Under the pieces are notes generated by a model, which saw nothing but the letters and a program-made list of their open reading frames with translations, searched no databases and was not told where the DNA came from. Shown piece after piece: positions 17,464 to 63,285 of a stretch of 64,000 nt of DNA. Location of the stretch: positions 434,001 through 498,000 of the forward strand of contig NEEC01000027.1 of NCBI GenBank assembly GCA_002189035.1. The letters are read 5' to 3'. How positions within the stretch are numbered: the first letter of the stretch is position 1; each line of letters begins with the position of its first letter. Both the position numbers and the translations under genes were made by a program. Source of the stretch: Utricularia gibba (taxonomy: Eukaryota > Plantae > Magnoliophyta).

Positions 17464-18794
17464 ATGCAACAGCACCTGATGCAGACGCAGATGCAGCCCA
17501 GGATGGCAGCCTACTACCACAGTAACGTCACTACTGATCACATCCAACAGGTTTCTTCTCCTCTTCTTCCTCTGCTTCTTCTTCTTCATCTTCTTCCTCT
17601 TCTTCTTCCTGTTTCAGTTCCTGTCCCTTCTCTTCTTGCTGCCACATAAGCTGGATTTCTACCATCTTCTCTTCCAAAATGGTTTCTTTTTTTGTGGGTC
17701 TTGCTTTTGATTTCATACCCAGTGGTTTGGGGCGTGTGGAACACCATTTTTCTATGCCTTTCCCTGAAAAAAAGAAAAGCATGTCTCATTTTCTACTGAG
17801 TGATATGCCGCCTGCCAGTTTCCTTCAAAAGTTGTAATCTTGGTGGGGTTAACACACTTCTTTTTCTGACTTGGCCTCAACTTTTATGCTCGTGAACAGC
17901 CACGGGGATCCCGGCAACATTGTATCTTGACACTGTGTTCTATACTTCCCGACACTTCTCTTTTTCCTTGGGGTTTACTTACTGGTGCTGTTGTGTTCTT
18001 TCTCTTTTTCACATCAACATTCTGTTTGTCACATCCCGACTTCAAAACTTCCACCTTGATCTGTTTTTATTTTTTTCAATGCTTTGCTACGGAGCTGAAA
18101 CTTTGATGTTTGTTGCAGTATCTGGACGAAAACAAGTCCCTGATTCTGAAGATTGTTGAGAGCCAGAACTCTGGAAAGCTGAGTGAATGTGCCGAGTAAG
18201 TTGTGTTTTTTCATCTGCACACTGAAAGGGATGCCAAACATTTTAGGGTTTGAATTGAAATTTGTTACTGTGGCTGCACAGGAACCAAGCGAGGCTTCAA
18301 AGAAACTTGATGTACTTAGCCGCCATTGCTGACTCCCAACCGCAGCTTCCCACCATGCATTCTCAGGTACTCTGAAGACTGTAGTTTTATTCATTAAGAG
18401 ATGGTATCTGACTCCCTTTAGTGTTGGGCGTTGAGCAGTATGCCGGTGGGGGGATGCTACAGACAAGCCCTTATCTGCAGCATCAGCAGTCGCAGCAAAT
18501 GGCTCCACAGTCACTAATGGCCGCCCGTTCATCCATGCTCTACGGCGCACAGCCTTACCCATCCCTCCAAACCCTCCACAGCCAACTCGGGATGAGCTCC
18601 GGCGGAAGCAGCGGCCTTATGCTGCAGGGAGAACCCCACGGTGGGGCTGGGGTTTCCCCGATTTCAGAGGTGGCATGCTAGGAATGGGCGGCGCAGGCAA
18701 GCAAGACACGGTGAACGGTATGACCGTGGAAGGCCCCGGCGGCGGTGACGGCGGTGAGAATCTGTATCTCAAAACCGCCGATGACGGCAATTAG
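17464..18794 (+). CDS. GIF1: GRF-interacting factor 1 / ANGUSTIFOLIA3 (SSXT domain coactivator); one frameshift near the 3' end
   Basis: Exon 1 17464-17550 MQQHLMQTQMQPRMAAYYHSNVTTDHIQQ, exon 2 YLDENKSLILKIVESQNSGKLSECAE, exon 3 NQARLQRNLMYLAAIADSQPQ, exon 4 Q/G-rich. The AN3-type tail GFPDFRGG...GGDGGENLYLKTADDGN* (stop 18792-18794) lies in a shifted frame after the G-run at 18649-18652. Confidence 0.95.
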
Positions 18795-50579: not shown

Positions 50580-51598
50580 ATGACACCGTTTGCGGCGGCA
50601 GGTTCCGTCCTCGCTGCGAATTGCTCGGCAAGATTCTACTACGCTCCGATCCAGCTGGATGCACTCCACTTGCCCCAACTCGGCGCCTCTCGGCGGCGGG
50701 GTTGCAGCCGGCGGGACAGCGGTTTTCTAGCTATAAGAGCATACATGGAGGATTCCGGCACCCTTTCCGGCTTCGCGAATAAGATCGTCGGCGCGATTCC
50801 TGTGGTTGGACTGATTGCCAGGATCGTCAACGCTGAAGGCGGTATCGGAGGAGATATTATCGATTTTGCGGAGTTCCGACGAAGAGTGGGCAACAAATGC
50901 TCCGTGAATGATTCCAGGGCCTTTTATGAGTTTCGAGATAGGCGTGGAAAGGTGAATTCTTTAGTTTGTCCATCAAATTCTTGTCCTCTTGCTCACATTC
51001 ATCAACCAATGTGTACGTTGTTTGGTTAAATCTAGGCTGGGGATCCTCTGTATGTGTTGCTGTGCTGCTGGTTGGCTGCTGTGGGCGCTGGTCTACTCAA
51101 ATCGGAAGAAATACTGGAAGGCATAGCCAGGCTTCGGATTTCCAATGACATTGAGTTTGAGGAGGAAAATTTCATCGCTATGATGAAGCAAGCAACTGAG
51201 GCAAGCCTCTTGCATTTTTTATGCTATTCACCTTTGTCCCAATGGGATCAGTCACATGAACTCCGGGATTGCAGAAACGGGCAAAGCTGAAAGCTTCCAT
51301 GCCCAAAGTCCCGATGGAAGTTCGGGTGGAAAAAGCTCTTGAAGCAATATATGTCTGCAGCTTTTGGAGGGATCCCGTAGAAGACGAAGATGCTGAACTA
51401 CTGGTTATCATTCTCAATGCTGTGTTTCCTACCGTAGGAAAGACAGAAATCGAAAGAATCGTTAGAGAGAAAGCCAAGAGGGTGGCTGATGGAACCGACG
51501 AAATCAAAGTGCCGGAGCCGAAGCCTTTACCTAAGGAGGCTGTACAGCTCCAAATGAAGGACCTAGAGTTTCTCAGGAAAGGAAGTCAGAAATCGTGA
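50580..51598 (+). CDS. PSA3: Photosystem I assembly factor PSA3 (chloroplast)
   Basis: IRAYMEDSGTLSGFANKIVGAIPVVGLIARI...DFAEFRRRVGNKC...RAFYEF...GK/AGDPLYVLLCCWLAAVGAGLLKSEEILEG...EKALEAIYVC...PKEAVQLQMKDLEFL. Three exons; intron 2 appears to be GC-AG. Confidence 0.92.
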
Positions 51599-52104
51599 CC
51601 CTTTATTGCACCAGAGACCGCTGCAAAGTGATGAAGCTGAGAGCGATGCTATAGGGAAATCAAACTGCCAAACTCATCTGGTTTGTAGAGATGTGCACTT
51701 GAGCCATAGAGAATTGTGAAATTCTACAGACCAAGTTCCCATTTTTAACAGGATTTTCCCTTCCCTGATGCTGTGAAACTGTCACCATATTCAAGGAGAT
51801 GGCTGCTATTTTCTCTCTTATTTTTTTTTTAACGGGCCAGGTTAGTAGTTTGCCCAAGATGTCTAGGGCTTACTGTCTCCAGAACTAATCTCGGGCTGAC
51901 TCGTAAACCCTTGTAGGAATGAGCCCAATTGCAATGATCCGGACATGAAACTCATCTTGCTGCACTACTGCTTCCTGGAGCCGCGATGCGGTGCTGCAAC
52001 TCGGCGAATTCCATCAACCACCGGTGGTTCGTCTATCCTCTCCAGGAGTACGCTGTTTGAGGGGGTCGTTCCACAGTCGTCGTCTTCTTCGAGACACCCG
52101 GAAT

Positions 52105-52113
52105 AAACCCTAA
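52105..52113 (+). promoter_or_regulatory. Telo-box (AAACCCTAA) just upstream of the chimeric gene, with a site II-like GAGCCCA at 51921-51927
   Basis: Motifs read directly. Telo-box plus site II (TGGGCY) is the established promoter combination of plant ribosomal and translation genes. Confidence 0.6.
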
Positions 52114-52124
52114 TCACTTCAACA

Positions 52125-52870
52125 ATGAAGCTTATTCGTAAAATCGCCGGTATTTCTTATTAATAGCTGTATAGATACTGCATGTTCCCTAAGTGTGCCC
52201 AGATTTTGCTTCACATTTTTCATCTCTTGTTCTTGTAGAGTCATCCAGTCAACGCGCATTTTTTCGGGCAATGGGGCGCAGGAATTTCCGTGCCCCATCG
52301 GAGGATTTCTTTATGCAGAATTGTGCCAATAAGGATTTTCACTACAACACTGCTGTTTACCCAATCGCATCCCCGAAAAGGTTTTACATCGTCTTTCTTA
52401 CAGTTGGCTCTCTGGATGTTTTCAGTTGGATTGAGTTTCACGCTTTGCTGTTCGTTTGTGTGTAGAATGTTAAATAGGCGTAACTTGTATGGTGATACGA
52501 TGCTTGATAGAGTGAATCTGGGAGGGACACACTTCATTCGCGTATTCTAGGGACAATGAGTGGGAGGCGAATGCAAGATGCATTCTTTCTCCACAGTGAA
52601 ACAAAAACCATGGATGACTTGTGTTCAGCCGGTTGGAATCCTGTGACACTGAGGCATACTCGTCCATCAGATGTTTACCCCAGCTTTTGTTTGCGGTTTT
52701 TCATTGAACCATGTTGTTCAGAATCATTGATCGAATCTGAACCAGACGTAGCCGCTGAGGATGATCCTGGAGTTCTGAGGGCTGATAGTGTAAAGAAGAA
52801 AAGGAAAAGGAAGATGAACAAACACAAACTGAGGAAGCAGAGGAGGCTTTTGAGGAGAAAGAGTCATTAG
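52125..52870 (+). CDS. Chimeric gene: duplicated PPR exons 1-3 fused to a mitoribosomal mS38 (COX24/AURKAIP1, DUF1713)-type C-terminus
   Basis: Exons 52125-52149, 52239-52380 and 52466-52870. The N-terminal part is colinear with the PPR gene at 63285-62772. The C-terminus is YPSF...ADSVKKKRKRKMNKHKLRKQRRLLRRKSH*. One missing G at 52520-52526 must be restored for a continuous 190 aa ORF. Confidence 0.8.
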
Positions 52871-53267
52871 TAGCTTTGTTATCCTCTATCCATATTCTTA
52901 GACTGCTTGATTCATTGAATCTACCTTACTTCGCTTGCAGAATAATCAAGAACTTTCTCTTCCACTGTTTCACTGGAAAATGTCTCGCCTTTGTCTCTAC
53001 TGCTTTACAAAATGCAGTCTTTGCAGCTACCCATATGGCACACTCAGTACTTTTTGCAGTGTCTTGGTTTTCAGATGTGTTTTATGGTTTAGTGCTTACT
53101 CTTTTCAGATCAGGATCTGGATTGAAGCAAGGGATGGTCGCCGGGAAGTCTAAAAGCGTAGATGACTAGAGCAGTGGCTTCGTGGTTTAGTTCAATTGAA
53201 CTTTTGTTTATAGAGGGAGAAATGGGAGCCACATAAAACGTGAGGCTCATTTGCACCAACGAGCCAA

Positions 53268-55258
53268 ATGGCCTCTACAGTCTTCTCCTTGGCTCCGAGA
53301 TTCTTTGTCGCCAATTCGCTCCCCAAAAACTCGCCACCGAAATCGCTGTCCCAATATAATATCGTCTCTCCGTTTCTCATAACTGCTTCCGGCGACAAGC
53401 TTAACCGGAGCCTTGTTGCCGGCGGAGCTGATTCTCGCGCCGGAGTGAACAAACTCGTGGATTCGTTACTCACGCTGTGTGCCTCGGTTGCTATATCGGC
53501 GTCTTTGCTGTTCGTTTCCGTTGATCCTGCAACAGCTTTTGTGGTGACGAGTCCTAGAAAATTGCAGTCCGATGAACTTGCTACGGTGCGGCTTTTCCAA
53601 GAGAACACTCCATCTGTTGTTTACATTACTAACCTAGCATCGAGGTAGTTTTTTTTTCTGTTGTTTGTTTGTATTTTCGAAAGGTTTTTGAACTTTTTAA
53701 TCTCTTTTAGGCAAGATGCTTTTACGTTGGATGTGCTGGAGGTGCCACAGGGATCAGGTTCTGGGTTTGTCTGGGATACAAATGGTCACATTGTAACCAA
53801 CTATCATGTGATTCGGGGTGCTTCTGATCTTAAGTATTTCTAATCTCTTATGTTTTTCTTCTTGTAATGCCATATTTTGTGCTGCATTTTCTGTGTTGAG
53901 GACTTGAGTCTTGGCTCTTGGTAAAACTTATGCCTGCAAGAAAATTTTTCAGTGCTATTGGGCTGGGTTACACATTTAAACTCTCATTTATCCTCATTGC
54001 GTGAAGGGTGACTCTTGCTGATCAGAGCACATATGATGCCAAGGTTGTTGGCTTCGATCAGGATAAAGATGTTGCTGTGTTGTATATTGATGCGCCTAAA
54101 GACAAGTTAAGACCCATACCCATTGGTATATCTGCGGACTTGCTTGTGGGCCAAAAAGTATACGCCATCGGTAATCCTGTGAGTAAAACACTGACCAATT
54201 CTCATCACCATTCCAATGTCATGAAGTTATTGAAGATCTGATGACACATCTCTCCCTTTCTGACATTGTTTCAACAGTTTGGACTTGATCATACACTCAC
54301 AACAGGCGTCATCAGGTATAATGAAGTTACTGAAAGCATGATATCTTCTGCTCCTTATATTCTTCAGTAGGCCTAATGTTGAACTAAGGGTGTTCTATAG
54401 ACTGCATTTTGACTATGGAGTAAAAGTGTATCCTACATTTCATTCATTGGCACAGGCAAATTGTCTGATACTTATTGCATGCTTTTTCTAACAGTGGGTT
54501 ACGGAGAGAAATCAGTTCTGCTGCTACTGGCCGTCCGATCCAGGATGTCATCCAAACTGATGCTGCAATTAATCCTGGTAACAGTGGAGGACCCCTCCTC
54601 GACAGTTCTGGAAACCTGATCGGGATAAACACTGCTATATACTCCCCTTCCGGTGCTTCATCTGGCGTCGGCTTCTCTATCCCAGTTGACACTGTAAGTG
54701 CCATGGAAGTAGCTCGCCTTCTTGGATCCATTGTTTCACTTTCATGCTCATCTTCAGGTCAGCGGCATAGTCGATCAGTTGGTGAAGTTCGGCAAGGTCA
54801 CCAGACCCATCCTAGGCATCAAGTTTGCACCTGATCAATCCGTGGAGCAACTTGGAGTCAGTGGGGTTCTAGTGCTGGATGCTCCTGCACAGGGACCAGC
54901 CGGCAAAGCAGTACGAATCCCCTCTCAATCCATTTCCTCCCTCCCATTTGATCGCTCCAGCTTTGGTGCTACTTACTATGCAGGGTCTTCAACCCACGAA
55001 ACGGGATGCCTTTGGAAGACTCATTTTGGGCGACATAATCACATCCATCAACGGGAAGAGGGTTTCCAATGGCAGCGACTTGTACAGAATACTGGATCAA
55101 TGCAAAGTTGGTGACAAGGTGAAGGACATCTGATGCCTTTGGAAAAGTTGCCTCAAACTGAACTGCTTCATTGCTCACAGGTTGTTGTGGAAGTGTTGCG
55201 CGGTGATCAAATGGAGAAGATCCCCGTGATCCTGGAGCCCAAACCAGATGAATCATAA
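53268..55258 (+). CDS. DEG1: Thylakoid lumen Deg/HtrA protease DEG1
   Basis: [39 protein letters not shown]...[49 protein letters not shown], and [15 protein letters not shown]. All eight exons are in phase; stop 55256-55258. Confidence 0.97.
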
Positions 55259-55541
55259 TGCAAACACAGAAGCAGCAGCAGCAGAAGCACCCAGGGGGAC
55301 TTCCTTGTATATTGTACGGAATGTTGGTTGCACCAAATATCCCCATGTCTTACCCATAGAACAAACCCAAGTTATTTCATTGGAATTGCTATGGACCCTT
55401 TAAACCCAATTCTATCATTTGCAATTAATTACAAAAGAATTGAATTAGGGCACCAGATGGAGCGCAGGTATTCATTCTGTACAAAGGATTGTTCTCCTTG
55501 AGCTGTGGCGTCGCGCAGTCGAGTGGAGTTTGGTGTCTAGG

Positions 55542-57679: not shown

Positions 57680-58216
57680 CTAAGGCCGTGCGGCGGTGCC
57701 CCCTCCGGCGGCGCCGCCTTCCTGCCCCTTGGACTTGATCACCTCGGCGGCTTGCTTTGTCTTATCGCCCATCATCTCCCCAACTTGTTTCGTTTTCTCC
57801 CCAACCTGAATCGTTGCCTCCTGCACGCGCCGCTTAGCGTACTCCAGCGGCTCTTGCCCGGTGGCCTGCCTGAGGGAATTGAGAACCCAGGAGAGTGATG
57901 ACAGCCCAGTGAGCCCAAAAGCACCAGAAGTCATGAACCCTGTCACCGCTCCTGCAAGGAGGATGGCGGCCGGTACTAAAATAGGGCTGCAGAGCAGGAA
58001 AAGTGGGGTGGCTACGGCCAGGCCAAGGAGTGTTCCGACGAGTGTGATTCCGGCGAGGCCGAGGAGTGAGGCGCCGATGGGAAACAAAGTGATGACAGCG
58101 AGAACTTGGGAAGTGGAAGGGCCCCTTGAAGGCTGTGGGAGAAGGCCCTTGATTCCGGCATCGTAGCGCTGCTGCGGGTGCACCTGGACCTGATGCGCCT
58201 GCGGACGGTCAGCCAT
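57680..58216 (-). CDS. Oleosin (seed high-molecular-weight type), intronless
   Basis: [18 protein letters not shown] start, [17 protein letters not shown], long hydrophobic hairpin with proline knot [15 protein letters not shown], then [18 protein letters not shown]. Confidence 0.96.
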
Positions 58217-58692: not shown

Positions 58693-59874
58693 ATGAGCCA
58701 GGCCGCCGCGTCGCTCTTGACCAATATTGCTCGGGCTGCGTTCAGCCTCGGTATCGGCGCCACCGTTCTCAATTCGGCGCTCTACACTGTCGACGGCGGC
58801 CAGCGTGCTGTTCTTTTCGATCGTTTCCGCGGAGTCATTGATGAGACCGTCGGTGAAGGGACGCACTTTCTGGTTCCCTGGCTTCAAAAGCCGTATATCT
58901 TCGACATTCGCACCCGTCCTCACACCTTTTCCTCCATCTCAGGTAACACCATCAACGTTAGAATTTCAGCGTTTCCTCCCTTGCTTTGACTGGTTCATTA
59001 GAAATTTTATTTTCTGCAACTACTTTGCCTCAAATCGATCGATCTTTAAACCGAAAACGAAGAGGTGTGCTGTGTTTTACCACTTAACCGGTATACATTG
59101 AACAGAAGATGCTTTGCATTTGCTACATTTCTGTGATTGAAGCATTTTATGGGTAACAAAGAAGCATTTTGATGATTTCTCTGCAATGGGTAAGGGACGA
59201 ACCAGTGGTTCCTACCACACTTGTCCTGTGTACATGCATCCGGACAGGCCTGGCGTTGTTAGATTCCTGCAACTGATGTATTGAATATGTCAGGCACCAA
59301 GGATCTGCAGATGGTGAATCTTACACTCCGGGTTCTTTCCCGTCCTGAGGTCAATCATCTCCCAGATATATTCAAGACTCTGGGGTTGGAGTATGATGAG
59401 AAGGTGCTCCCATCAATCGGCAATGAGGTTCTCAAGGCGGTTGTTGCTCAGTTCAATGCAGATCAGTTGCTCACTGAAAGACCCCGAGTTTCTGCCCTTG
59501 TCCGCGAAGGCTTGATAGGAAGGGCAAAGGACTTCAACATTGAACTTGATGATGTTGCCATCACTCACTTATCATACGGTGCTGAGTTCTCCAAGGCTGT
59601 GGAGCAGAAGCAGGTTGCACAGCAGGAGGCTGAGCGCTCCAAGTTTGTAGTGATGAAGGCTGAGCAGGAGAGGAGGGCTGCAATCATTAGAGCCGAAGGT
59701 GAAAGCGAGGCTGCCAAGTTGATTTCTGATGCAACCGCAGCAGCTGGGATGGGGCTGATTGAGCTTAGGAAGATTGAAGCAGCAAGAGAGAACGTTGCAT
59801 CCATGGCCCGGAATGGGAATGTAATCTACGTCCCTCGTGATGCCAACATCTTCCTCGGCGGACCTCGTCCCTAG
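58693..59874 (+). CDS. PHB3: Mitochondrial prohibitin, type I (PHB3/PHB4)
   Basis: Exons 58693-58942 and 59294-59874. [83 protein letters not shown] and [15 protein letters not shown]. Confidence 0.97.
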
Positions 59875-60175: not shown

Positions 60176-63100
60176 TCAAGACTCTGCTTGTCTTCCACCG
60201 GAAGGTCCAAACCTTACCATAAGATTATTCAATGTCTTGGAAACCAGCAGGAGACGAGAATCATCTTCTGGTATCTCCCTTTCCTGAAAAGGGTTATCAA
60301 ACCATGAGGAAGAAATTGTGCAGACGCGGAGCTGAAGTTTCAGGAGAAACAAAAACAAACAATACACGTAAAAAGGGCCTCCCTCACCTTCAACCCATTG
60401 TGATAAGCCTGGACGGCGGGGAGTGATGGCGTGAACCGGCGCTTTTGCATCATGTCCCATATCAAGTTGGCGACGGTGTACCCACCAGCCTAGTAATGAG
60501 TGCTATGAATCAGCGCTCACATGGAAAAAAATGACCGTAGTGTTTGCAGAACAACGATAGAGATACTTTCTACCTTTTCACCAGAAGCGACGAGGAGGAG
60601 TTCGCTCCCCTGTTTGGAACTCAAAAAGAAGCCTCTACTATTCAACATTACCTGGATGTTCAATGAGATCAACCATAAACCATCTTTGAATGAACGAGAT
60701 CCCACTCAAATGGCATCAGTAACATATGGAGGATTAAGAACTAATGGCAAGGGACAGGAGAGATACCAGAGTGTCGTAGGCAAGTTGCATGCCCTTAGGT
60801 GTGTACCCCACCATCGCTCCTTCAGCAAGCGTCTGTGAATAATTAGTAGTGGCATTAATAAAAACAAGTTTTTAAAAAGCTGACAGAAAGGACAAATAAC
60901 TGCACTAAGGGAAATTAAGCATCAACGATGTGTCTAGCAAGAATTATTCACAAAATTCTTTTCACAAGTGGAAAAAAGGACACCAAAATTCTCATGTTTG
61001 CGCATGAATAGTTGACTTATATTATGTTCCCAAACTTACAAAATATAGTTCCACCATGGGTTGCTTCCTTGAGTTCATGTAGTCATCAAATATTTTATGG
61101 CCTTTGTCGATGTCCCCAGAATGCAGATAACACCTGCACTACAGTATCAATTGTAAAGGAGATTGATTTAAAATAAACATGGTACAACATTACTTTCCAC
61201 CGAAATGAAGATTACCTCATAATTTGCAGCAATATGAATACATCAGGTGTTTTTCCATCCTTCTCAAGCATTTCCATTAGTTTTTCAGTAGCCTTCCAAA
61301 ACATTATAAAAGGGAACTTTTGAAAACTATGTAGACAGCTCACCGTGCAAATTGCAAGTCAAATAAAAGACAATCAACAGGTGTTACTAGGCATGCCATT
61401 AGACAAGAATCAGAGTCTTCGAAAAATAATTGAAAAGGCATGAAGGGTATAAGATTAACTCAACTGAGATTTTACTACACACCTGAACATCCTTGAGATC
61501 GGCAAGGGCATGAAATGCAACATGGTATATCGTCAATGATCTAACAATGAAGCCACCACGGCGATGGACATATTCACCTGTTGGAAGGTTATATAATTCT
61601 TCTTCGGAAACACCCATGGTATCATACGCTGGATTTTCTTTTGTTTCATCAACTGAGGACCATCCCTTGGACTGCTCCACCAGCTCAATAATCTTGCAAG
61701 AAGAAAATTTTAAGGCTTTTTAATCAGCAGCGAAAAATGACAGAAGTAATGTTTCATGCGTACTTTGGAAGATATCTCATCTGTAGGAGTTGACTTATTC
61801 ATGTGCGCAGTTATGAGACCAGCATAGCAAAATTTGTTCAGACCAAGACCAGCTGCAGTCATATCTCTGACAATGGCATTTCTGCAACATCAAAATAAGA
61901 CATTGTGCTTACTGTGATGGTGAAGACCACGAATAGAGCATTTCAAGGTGCAGTCACTATTTTTGTAGAAGCAGCCACAGATACATATTAAATCATATTC
62001 ATGATCACATTTTCCAAGAAGAAAGTCATAGTCACTATAAGGAGGTGTATACGTAATTTGTTTGAGCTTACACTCGATCTAATCTTCCATTTGCAGCACA
62101 TGCATTAAGTAGACAGATGTAAGTTTGGCTAGTAGGTTTGACTTCAGATTTCTTCATTTCCTCCAGAAGCTTCAGTTCAGCGAAAGAAACAAATGGTCTC
62201 AAAAAAAAAAGGGGGGGGGGGGGGGGTCATACAAAAAAAAAAAAAGGTTTAGTTATATCTATCTTGAAGGATTTAGAGTCTTTTTGATGTAACTCCATCT
62301 TCAATAAAATTACTTCTAGAAGTGATTCTTGAATAAAACACATGTTGCTTCTATTCCATATAAAACTAAAACAATAAAGTGCTTCAATTTTTTAAGAAGC
62401 TGAAGGATCCCTACTCCAATAAAAACTGAAATGTTTTTTATATATAAAAATTCACTTTTTTTAAAATTATTTTTTGAAGCTATACCAAAGAGATCCTTAA
62501 ACTCAGAAGTAAAATATATTCAATACCCAAATGGCTTGCTCAGAATTCTTGCACTTCCCACATGTAGATATCAAGTAGTTGTACAACGCAACCTGATGAT
62601 AATAAACAGAGACAGTGATGATTTCTTCACAGTAAAAACAAAGATAGTCCAGATTTCCTAATTGTAGTCTGAAAACTAAAAGGGCAATGCAAATAATGAT
62701 TGACTTGAATATCACCCGGGAACTATAAAATGATCCCAAATTATCAAAAGGCAGGTGAGGCAACAACGTACATCAGGAACCGCACCCATGGATCTCATTT
62801 CATCGCGAAAAAAGAACGCATCTTGCATTCGACTCCCCTCATCGTCCCCAGAATAAGTGCGTGAAATGTATCCCTATCTGGCTTCACTCCATCAAGCATC
62901 ATATCATCATACACGTCTCTCAATAAATAATGCCTAAAGAAAATTTAGACTCGGCTCACTCAAAAACAATGAAAAACTTGAGATGTCTAAAAGCATCTTC
63001 TCATCAAATTAAAGGGCACGCGAACCTTCTTTGAGATGTAATTGAGCTGATAACAGTGTTGTATTCAGCCTCATTGTTGGCATAATTCCTCTTCAAATAT

Positions 63101-63285
63101 TCCTCTGAGTGAGCACTGAAATTCATGTGCTGCATTGCTCGGTAATGAGCTCGGCGACTCGCCAATTCTACAAACAAAAAAAAAGCACGAACCTAGAAAA
63201 AATGGCCCTCGCAATCACATAGTACATACACATTATTTTCATTGGCTCAGCAAGAAGTACCAGCGAATTTACGAATAAGCTTCAT
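60176..63285 (-). CDS. Intron-rich mitochondrial P-type pentatricopeptide repeat protein (recalled as At4g35850-like); one frameshift in exon 3
   Basis: Exons 63285-63261 (MKLIRKFA), 63167-63026 (EEYLKRNYANNEAEYNTVI) and 62933-62772 (HYLLRDVYDDMMLDGVKPDRDTFHALILGTM..RMQDAFFFRDEM). Later exons VALYNYLISTCGKCK, TYICLLNACAANGRLD, RDMTAAGLGLNKFCYAGLI, GVSEEELYNLPT, CYLHSGDID, AGGYTVANLIWDMMQ and EREIPEDDSRL. Confidence 0.93.
62201..62245. repeat. Adjacent A10, G16 and A13 homopolymer runs inside a PPR intron
   Basis: A 62201-62210, G 62211-62226 and A 62233-62245, read directly. Confidence 0.9.

What the first reader, a model, noticed from the sequence alone, without database searches (positions are those of the whole stretch)
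52125..52870. Chimeric gene: a duplicated PPR N-terminus fused to mitoribosomal protein mS38
Seen in sequence: exon 1 ATGAAGCTTATTCGTAAAATCGCCG|gtattt (25 nt) matches ATGAAGCTTATTCGTAAATTCGCTG|gtactt (25 nt) of the PPR gene at 63285. Exon 2 is 142 nt in both genes with the same intron phases and 21 of 48 identical residues, and has no stop despite that divergence. Exon 3 stays codon-colinear (DTMLDRVNLGG.DTLHSRILGTMSGRRMQDAFF vs DMMLDGVKPDRDTFHALILGTMRGSRMQDAFF) up to CCATGG at 52608-52613. It then switches to unrelated sequence ending YPSF...ADSVKKKRKRKMNKHKLRKQRRLLRRKSH*. Established: a terminal basic helix of the form SV-KKR-KKMNKHK is the signature of mS38/COX24/AURKAIP1 (DUF1713), a mitochondrial small-subunit protein. 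Inference: an mS38 gene lost its own N-terminus and captured the promoter-proximal exons (mitochondrial presequence plus a decaying first PPR motif) of a neighbouring mitochondrial PPR gene. With one G restored at 52520-52526 the spliced ORF is 190 aa (MKLIRKIAESSSQRAFF...RRKSH). This would be a lineage-specific case of presequence acquisition by exon shuffling between two nuclear genes, and standard annotation would likely miss it or call only the 104 aa ORF.
Basis: partly seen in the sequence, partly recalled or inferred. Interest (0 to 1): 0.9.

Follow-up and report, generated by a model that had tools for sequence, protein, structure and literature searches.

The report
Expressed chimeric PPR-leader mS38 gene
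In a bladderwort-family plant, the gene for mitochondrial ribosome protein mS38 has replaced its own front end with a duplicated copy of the first three exons of a neighbouring mitochondrial PPR gene; reads show it is spliced, polyadenylated and has an intact 190-codon frame, a clean example of a known way of acquiring a targeting leader.

Summary

**Structure.** Window 52125-52870 (+) carries exons of 25 nt, 142 nt and about 149 nt. These are colinear, without indels, with exons 1-3 of the PPR gene at 63285 (-). That gene is the orthologue of Arabidopsis At4g35850, a protein shown to be mitochondrial. At 52600-52613 the sequence switches, in frame and inside exon 3, to a genuine mS38 C-terminal two-thirds. 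This part scores 28.5 bits against Pfam COX24_C (cut-off 23) and E 5e-11 against Arabidopsis mS38 in PDB 6XYW.

**Frameshift.** The apparent frameshift is an assembly error. One DNA run and three RNA runs all show an extra G after 52519, which gives a 190-aa ORF.

**Expression.** The same three RNA runs show both predicted splice joints. They also give a transcript running from about 51908 to a poly(A) site at 53046.

**Direction of capture.** The closest relative available, Genlisea aurea, has two intronless mS38 genes with the usual N-terminus, as do other angiosperms. PPR orthologues elsewhere already have these N-terminal exons. So the PPR gene was the donor.

**Evolution of the parts.** The captured part is evolving about five times faster than its parent. 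The mS38 core motif is unchanged.

**Not tested.** I could not test whether a second mS38 copy exists in this genome, whether the protein is imported, or whether it joins the ribosome.

**Verdict.** A real chimeric gene and a new member of a known kind. Interest is moderate.

The parts
51908..52124 (+). Transcribed 5' leader of at least 217 nt. It holds a 13-nt block (GAGCCCAATTGCA, 51921-51933) also found upstream of the PPR gene. It carries several upstream AUGs, including a 65-codon uORF that overlaps the main AUG. The assembly lacks one G after 52060.
   Evidence: RNA contigs start at 51915 (X1) and 51908 (X6). Extra G after 52060 in all 4 runs. Upstream alignment. uORFs.
52125..52149 (+). 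Exon 1 coding part (25 nt, MKLIRKIA + 1 nt), copied from PPR exon 1.
   Evidence: 23/25 nt identical to 63285-63261. Joint 52149|52239 in three RNA runs.
52150..52238 (+). Intron 1 (89 nt, GT..AG).
   Evidence: Skipped in RNA contigs of X1, X5 and X6.
52239..52380 (+). Exon 2 (142 nt), copied from PPR exon 2. It holds the end of the presequence and the inferred MPP/ICP55 processing site (GRRN|F|RAPSED).
   Evidence: 142 nt in both genes, 65% nt identity, 21/48 residues identical. The site is homologous to the experimentally determined mature N-terminus F/ASSPEEIAKR of At4g35850 (PMC4986872).
52381..52465 (+). Intron 2 (85 nt, GT..AG).
   Evidence: Skipped in RNA contigs of X1, X5 and X6.
52466..52613 (+). 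PPR-derived part of exon 3 (149 nt in reality). The window lacks one G after 52519.
   Evidence: 74% nt identity to 62933-62786 (-). Extra G in DNA run X10 and RNA runs X1, X5 and X6. No PPR hit in Pfam for the locus A pieces scanned; the stretch spanning the missing G was not scanned as one piece.
52600..52613 (+). Fusion junction, in frame and inside the exon. PPR homology ends at CCATGG. mS38 homology (K..DD) begins within the same roughly 14 nt.
   Evidence: DNA alignments with the PPR gene and with the two Genlisea mS38 genes.
52614..52870 (+). mS38-derived coding part (85 codons plus stop). It corresponds to residues about 40-129 of canonical plant mS38 and includes the YPSF box and the basic C-terminal helix.
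52781..52855 (+). Pfam COX24_C match, within the conserved ADSVKKKRKRKMNKHK core region.
   Evidence: 28.5 bits against a cut-off of 23. Columns invariant across 14 plant mS38 proteins.
52871..53046 (+). 3' UTR up to the poly(A) site.
   Evidence: X1 contig ends at 53041. X6 contig ends at 53046 followed by 23 A.
62786..63285 (-). Parental sequence: exons 1-3 of the At4g35850-type PPR gene. The whole gene runs from 63285 to about 60340 on the minus strand.
   Evidence: Name from P0133. PPR_2 at 30.6 bits on a later exon.

Best explanation
Locus A is a real, transcribed chimeric nuclear gene in a Lentibulariaceae plant, most probably Utricularia gibba.

**Origin.** A partial inverted duplicate of the neighbouring At4g35850-type mitochondrial PPR gene became joined to a copy of the intronless mS38 gene. 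The duplicate comprised about 200 nt of upstream sequence plus exons 1-3. The join is in frame and inside exon 3. The mS38 copy had lost its first ~40 codons, that is, its own presequence.

**Product.** The mRNA has three exons and two short GT..AG introns, runs from about 51908 to 53046, and encodes 190 aa:
- residues 1 to about 25: the PPR presequence, with its MPP/ICP55 processing site
- residues about 26-105: a fast-evolving remnant of the PPR N-terminal region, which serves only as a spacer
- residues about 106-190: the mS38 module

**Inferred mechanism.** The PPR leader imports the protein into mitochondria and is cleaved near RRN|F|RAPS. The conserved basic C-terminal helix then takes the usual mS38 place along helix 44 of the small-subunit rRNA.

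**What is shown and what is inferred.** Shown: gene structure, intact frame, splicing, polyadenylation, homologies and direction of capture. Inferred: translation from the first AUG, import, processing and ribosome incorporation. The confidence given is for the whole statement including the inferred function; the structure and expression alone I put at about 0.95.
For: **Structure and expression.**
- Frame: an extra G after 52519 in one DNA and three RNA runs gives a 190-aa ORF.
- Contiguity: DNA contig X10 (2092 nt, 51487-53576) covers the whole locus colinearly, so there is no misassembly.
- Both splice joints occur in three RNA runs from three studies, and there is a poly(A) tail at 53046.
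- Two diverged genotypes (X5, X6; 9 listed coding differences, the run's table being truncated) keep the listed frame stop-free and the same structure.

**mS38 part.**
- Pfam COX24_C above cut-off.
- Best relatives are the Genlisea mS38 proteins.
- E 5e-11 to mS38 of the solved Arabidopsis mitoribosome 6XYW.
- Every invariant column of 14 plant mS38 proteins is kept.
- dN/dS is 0.17-0.18 against Genlisea.

**PPR part.**
- Exons are colinear at 25, 142 and 149 nt without indels.
- Orthologues in other plants have the same three exons.
- At4g35850 is mitochondrial by MS, and its mature N-terminus maps to the conserved RRNF|A.. site kept in locus A.
- The first 24 residues have 7 K/R and 1 acidic residue.
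- dN/dS of the presequence codons is 0.23.

**Direction.** Genlisea and other angiosperm mS38 genes have their own different N-terminus and no intron.
Against: - No protein-level evidence of any kind.
- The PPR-derived part evolves almost neutrally: branch dN is 0.30 against 0.06 in the parent, with 27 against 6 unique residue changes.
- A stop-free frame alone would arise by chance in 6-20% of simulations.
- The leader seen in RNA contigs carries upstream AUGs, one opening a 65-codon uORF that overlaps the main AUG. This would depress translation if the true start site is as far upstream as the contigs suggest.
- Contig word depth in run X1 is 15, against 82-115 for the contigs of the two neighbouring genes. 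The tool warns this is a poor measure of expression.
- A second, canonical mS38 copy elsewhere in the genome could not be searched for. Genlisea has two copies.
Confidence: 0.68

Rival explanations
1. Expressed but functionally redundant or decaying chimera. Another canonical mS38 gene elsewhere in the genome does the work. This locus is a transcribed by-product of a local rearrangement on its way to loss.
For: - The sister genus has two mS38 genes, so redundancy is plausible.
- The N-terminal 105 codons evolve near neutrally.
- The leader carries uAUGs.
- Contig word depth in X1 is lower than for the neighbouring genes' contigs, a poor measure of expression.
- A stop-free frame is not significant by itself.
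Against: - The PPR duplication is old (dS about 0.7 to the parent). Yet the mS38 core keeps every invariant residue of the family, and the frame has no indel in 316 + 255 nt, while the introns changed length.
- The frame is intact in three genotypes.
- The presequence and its processing motif GRRNF are kept, better than in the parental PPR copy, which reads QHMNF.
Confidence: 0.22
2. Only the 104-aa ORF (52556-52870) is translated. The PPR-like exons would then be an untranslated leader, as the window sequence with its frameshift suggests.
For: As assembled, the window has a stop at 52548-52550 in the exon 1-3 frame. The longest ORF is then 104 aa.
Against: - The frameshift does not exist in the reads: a G is present after 52519 in DNA and RNA.
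- A product starting at that internal Met would lack any presequence, although the module it encodes is a mitochondrial ribosomal protein.
Confidence: 0.04
3. Assembly chimera: the PPR-like and mS38 parts are joined only in this assembly.
For: The assembly does contain errors, with three one-base deletions in 4.8 kb.
Against: An independent 2013 short-read DNA contig (X10, 2092 nt) and RNA contigs from three studies all cross the junction.
Confidence: 0.01

Closest known systems
Canonical plant mS38 (Arabidopsis mS38, PDB 6XYW chain BB; Genlisea aurea M569_13883 and M569_08943)
   Same: The YPSF box, an acidic linker and the invariant ADSVKKKRKRKMNKHK basic helix. Pfam COX24_C above its cut-off. 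The match to the 6XYW chain covers residues 65-137 of 137.
   Different: Canonical genes are about 130 aa and, in Genlisea, intronless, with their own N-terminus (consensus MAS.L.KLLRK...). Here the first ~40 residues are missing and are replaced by 105 residues encoded by three PPR-derived exons.
At4g35850-type mitochondrial P-class PPR gene (parent copy at window 63285-60340, minus strand)
   Same: The same exon 1 (25 nt), exon 2 (142 nt) and exon 3 up to codon 105, with the same intron positions and phases. A shared upstream block. A conserved presequence processing site.
   Different: Locus A has none of the later PPR exons. Pfam finds no PPR motif in the locus A pieces scanned. Residue change is five times faster than in the parent. 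It is not a PPR protein.
Presequence acquisition from another nuclear gene for a mitochondrial protein. One example is sdh3 with a heat-shock-protein presequence in conifers (PMC8317393). From my own knowledge, rps14 within sdh2 and rps11 with atp2/cox5b leaders in grasses are further examples.
   Same: A mitochondrial protein gene gains its targeting leader, and probably its promoter, by fusion to the 5' exons of a gene for another mitochondrial protein.
   Different: Those cases concern genes newly transferred from the mitochondrial genome that had no leader. Here an anciently nuclear gene that already had a working presequence has had it replaced. The donor is a PPR gene 10 kb away, and the joint is inside an exon rather than through an intron or alternative splicing.
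Chimeric genes born from partial duplication and fusion (the jingwei or Sdic type in Drosophila, retrogene chimeras in rice; from my own knowledge)
   Same: The 5' part of one gene is duplicated and fused to the body of another. The recruited part then evolves rapidly.
   Different: Here both partners serve the same organelle. The recruited part has an obvious role as import signal, while the protein's core function is probably unchanged.

Membership tests
mS38 / COX24_C (PF08213, DUF1713) | C-terminal Lys/Arg-rich helix matching the family profile above the curated threshold | tested here: met
   28.5 bits against a cut-off of 23, residues 76-100 of the 104-aa ORF. 28.3 bits on the 114-aa piece.
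mS38 / COX24_C (PF08213, DUF1713) | Homology to plant mS38 beyond the basic helix (YPSF box and linker), and to mS38 chains of solved plant mitoribosomes | tested here: met
   Alignment with 13 angiosperm mS38 proteins. 6XYW_BB at E 5.2e-11 and 9EVS_c at E 4.9e-9. Genlisea alignment from K..DD onward.
mS38 / COX24_C (PF08213, DUF1713) | Mitochondrial import and presence in the small subunit of the mitoribosome | not testable with these tools
   Only inferred, from the presequence-like N-terminus (7 K/R and 1 acidic residue in 24 residues) and from homology to the mapped processing site of At4g35850.
Pentatricopeptide repeat (PPR) proteins | Tandem 35-residue PPR motifs recognised by the PPR profiles | tested here: not met
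   No PPR family hit at E up to 10 on the PPR-derived pieces of locus A that could be scanned by reference; the stretch spanning the missing G was not scanned as one piece. The parent gene hits PPR_2 at 30.6 bits in a later exon and 17.5 bits in exon 3. Locus A only derives from a PPR gene.
Exon shuffling in the strict sense (recombination within introns joining whole exons) | The junction between donor and recipient coincides with an intron | tested here: not met
   The switch of homology lies at 52600-52613, inside exon 3. This is about 15 nt before the place where the parental exon 3 ends.
Presequence capture by gene fusion | The N-terminus is homologous to the leader of another gene for a mitochondrial protein, and the recipient's relatives lack it | tested here: met
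   PPR orthologues have it. Genlisea and other angiosperm mS38 proteins lack it. The donor is mitochondrial by MS.

The most novel reading that the evidence does not exclude
The chimera is the only working mS38 gene left in this species. An essential small-subunit protein of the mitoribosome would then be imported by a PPR presequence. Its mature form would carry an ~80-residue PPR-derived N-terminal extension in place of its native N-terminal segment. In yeast the divergent N-terminal part of mS38 specifically affects COX1 mRNA translation (PMC6582356). Such a replacement could therefore alter cytochrome oxidase synthesis in a plant family noted, to my own knowledge, for unusual cytochrome oxidase evolution.
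Probability: 0.15. Interest if true: 0.65.

Novelty: new member of a known kind. Interest (0 to 1): 0.45.

Why it matters
This is a well-documented natural case in which a nuclear gene for a mitochondrial ribosomal protein exchanged a working presequence for that of a neighbouring gene. Both parents are still identifiable: the donor lies 10 kb away, and unfused relatives exist in the sister genus. Most textbook cases concern genes freshly transferred from the organelle. This one shows the same route operating on an old nuclear gene, and it gives dated material for studying how a captured coding segment decays into a mere leader plus spacer.

There is also a practical point. The window's assembly has one-base homopolymer deletions, which would make automatic annotation truncate or miss this gene, and probably others in this genome.

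Tried and rejected
- **Second mS38 in the window.** A blastn hit of the mS38 tail to 17558-17607 proved to be GA-rich low complexity. tblastn with Genlisea and another plant mS38 finds only locus A, and no remnant of the canonical N-terminal 40 residues.
- **The 190-aa chimera or a close canonical relative in the 5.8-billion protein set.** None was found; the best hits remain Genlisea at 45-61%. This organism's proteins seem absent from that set, so nothing can be said about other copies.
- **Synteny with Genlisea.** The neighbours of both Genlisea mS38 genes have no counterpart in the window. The contigs are too short to say which partner moved.
- **Earlier notes of this scan.** Nothing near the locus, and no note mentioning mS38, COX24 or DUF1713.
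- **PPR gene among solved mitoribosome chains.** No match, so it is not shown to be a ribosomal PPR.
- **Branch-specific dN/dS for the captured part.** dS is too noisy, with about 60 synonymous sites (branch dS 0.12 against 0.57). I draw only the dN contrast from it.
- **'No stop codon' as proof of selection.** Rejected as weak, since 6-20% arise by chance.
- **Literature.** No paper links Utricularia with mS38, COX24 or DUF1713.

Full report
**1. What is in the sequence.**

On the plus strand at 52125 an ATG opens a 25-nt coding stretch followed by GT. On the minus strand at 63285 a second ATG opens a 25-nt stretch that differs at two positions and is also followed by GT. A pairwise DNA alignment and an exon-by-exon comparison give these values:

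| Segment | Locus A | PPR gene | Comparison |
|---|---|---|---|
| Exon 1 | 25 nt | 25 nt | 92% identical |
| Exon 2 | 142 nt | 142 nt | no gap, 65% identical, z = 10 against shuffles |
| Exon 3 up to CCATGG | 149 nt | 148 nt | 74% identical, z = 15 |
| Intron 1 | 89 nt | 93 nt | z = 4.0 |
| Intron 2 | 85 nt | 92 nt | z = -0.9 |

A short block (GAGCCCAATTGCA) and scattered similarity also occur about 140-200 nt upstream of both ATGs.

**2. The tail is mS38.**

- The ORF 52556-52870 hits Pfam COX24_C at 28.5 bits against a curated cut-off of 23.
- A search of 5.8 billion proteins returns only plant mS38/DUF1713 proteins of about 130 aa. The best hits are two Genlisea aurea proteins.
- In an alignment with 13 of these proteins, every invariant column (P of the YPSF box, ADSVKKKRK.KMNKHK..K.R..L) is kept.
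- Against the Protein Data Bank the best match is chain BB, named mS38, of the Arabidopsis mitoribosome entry 6XYW (E 5.2e-11, chain residues 65-137 of 137). Next comes mS38 of 9EVS.
- So mS38 is a structural component of plant mitoribosomes, and this locus carries its conserved part.

**3. The frameshift is an assembly error, and the gene is expressed.**

I laid contigs of three RNA runs from three studies (X1, X5, X6) and one 2013 DNA run (X10) on 50600-55400.

- All four runs carry one extra G after 52519. All four also carry another extra G after 52060.
- With the G, the spliced frame is 190 codons from the ATG at 52125 to the TAG at 52868-52870.
- All three RNA runs skip 52150-52238 and 52381-52465 (GT..AG).
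- X1 gives a 955-nt transcript contig from 51915 to 53041. An X6 contig ends at 53046 followed by 23 A.
- The DNA contig of X10 (2092 nt, 51487-53576) is colinear with the window across the junction, which excludes a misassembly.
- X1 and X10 are otherwise identical to the window. X5 and X6 represent a genotype differing at nine listed coding positions (six non-synonymous, three synonymous), none listed that breaks the frame. The tool's table of differences was truncated, so the list may be incomplete.

**4. Who donated what.**

*The PPR side.*
- An exhaustive HMMER search with exon 2 of the 63 kb gene finds 31 proteins.
- The ones I read are short or mispredicted fragments that contain the same exon-2 sequence. 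In P0131 the fragment also contains exon 1 (MKLVRAIT) and exon 3.
- One of them is named 'pentatricopeptide repeat-containing protein At4g35850, mitochondrial-like'.
- A genomic contig from another plant (L003) has the same exons 2 and 3 with splice sites in the same places.
- Hence these three exons are ancestral to the PPR gene.
- Further downstream the 63 kb gene has the expected PPR exons (PPR_2 at 30.6 bits).

*The mS38 side.*
- Both Genlisea genes are single ORFs with the family's usual N-terminus: L002 3092-3481, and L001 903-1301. The latter is annotated as a 64-aa partial but is complete at 132 aa.
- DNA and protein alignments place the start of mS38 homology in locus A at K..DD, residues about 102-106. 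That is Genlisea residue 40-42, within a few bases of the CCATGG where PPR homology ends.
- The joint is therefore in frame, inside exon 3, about 15 nt before the parental exon would end.
- No remnant of the first 40 mS38 codons exists in the window.

**5. The organism.**

The oleosin gene of the window is 82-83% identical to Genlisea aurea oleosins and about 70-77% identical to those of other Lamiales. The mS38 part shares RADSV and SFC with Genlisea. Genes lie every 2-3 kb and introns measure 60-240 nt. I infer a Lentibulariaceae plant, most probably Utricularia gibba. This identification is an inference.

**6. The captured leader is a mitochondrial presequence.**

- At4g35850 was found in mitochondria in several proteomic studies (PMC3858439).
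- Its mature N-termini, F-ASSPEEIAKR and ASSPEEIAKR, mark it as a substrate of MPP followed by ICP55 (PMC4986872).
- The homologous place in orthologues reads RALGRRNF-CAPSEEYAKR. In locus A it reads RAMGRRNF-RAPSEDFF.
- The Arg-Arg-x-Phe context is kept in locus A, better than in the parental copy (QHMNF).
- The first 24 residues hold 7 Lys/Arg and one acidic residue.
- dN/dS between the two copies is 0.23 for codons 1-25 and 0.56 for codons 26-105.

**7. How the parts evolve.**

With P0131 as outgroup, 27 residue changes are unique to locus A, 6 are unique to the parental copy and 11 are shared by both. With L003 and codons, branch dN is 0.30 for locus A against 0.06 for the parent. dS is too noisy to give a branch ratio. 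Pfam sees no PPR motif in the locus A pieces scanned. So the segment after the presequence is under little constraint beyond keeping the frame.

The open frame by itself is weak evidence, because 6-20% of simulated copies stay stop-free. The absence of any indel in the exons, while both introns changed length, adds some weight.

The mS38 module has dN/dS of 0.17-0.18 against Genlisea and an unchanged core. The PPR duplication is old (dS about 0.7). If the fusion is about as old, an unconstrained tail would not have kept 16 invariant residues. This step is inference.

**8. Caveats.**

- The leader in the RNA contigs is at least 217 nt long. After the G correction it contains four upstream AUGs, one opening a 65-codon uORF that overlaps the main AUG. 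The true start site is unknown.
- Contig word depth in X1 is about 15, against 82-115 for the neighbouring genes' contigs. The tool warns this is a poor measure of expression.
- No protein like the chimera, and no close canonical relative, is in the protein collection. I could not search the rest of this genome. Whether a second mS38 exists is open.

**9. Comparison and verdict.**

Leaders taken from other nuclear genes for mitochondrial proteins are known for genes transferred from the organelle, for example sdh3 with a heat-shock-protein leader (PMC8317393). Chimeric genes made by partial duplication are also known.

This case is a new member of that kind, with three particular features:
- The recipient is an old nuclear gene whose own presequence was replaced.
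- The donor is a PPR gene 10 kb away.
- The joint is exonic.

In yeast the divergent N-terminal part of mS38 matters for COX1 translation (PMC6582356). A functional consequence is therefore conceivable but untested.

I rate the structure and expression as established. The function as an imported mitoribosomal protein is likely, at about two in three. Interest is moderate.

Noticed in passing
window 52060, 52519, 54918: The assembly lacks single bases in homopolymer runs. A G is missing after 52060 and after 52519 (all four runs), and a C after 54918 (DNA run X10). That is three one-base deletions in 4.8 kb. Frameshift-based pseudogene calls in this genome need read support.
   Followed up: partly
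window 62836-62840 (minus strand gene): The parental PPR gene shows an apparent one-base deletion in a G run (ATGAG-GGGAG) that breaks its exon 3 frame. Given the errors above, it is probably also an assembly artefact. It was not checked with reads.
   Followed up: no
window 51679-51916: In run X5 one contig joins the 3' end of the upstream gene (50733-51679) to the locus A leader through a 236-nt GT..AG skip. This is a spliced read-through form, seen in one run only. The acceptor sits where the locus A contigs of X1 and X6 begin.
   Followed up: no
L001 903-1301 (Genlisea aurea KE530664.1): The protein M569_08943 is annotated as a 64-aa partial. A complete, intronless 132-aa mS38 ORF with the canonical N-terminus is present on the contig.
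   Followed up: yes
window 51945-52140: After correcting the G at 52060, a 65-codon upstream ORF begins MKLI..., like the main ORF, and overlaps the main AUG in another frame. Whether it is translated or lies within the real transcript is unknown.
   Followed up: partly
window 53237-55400, 57680-58216, 58693-59874: Neighbouring genes are a Deg/HtrA-type trypsin-like protease (spliced in RNA runs), an H-type oleosin closest to Genlisea aurea, and a prohibitin (Band 7). All appear intact in a very compact arrangement.
   Followed up: partly
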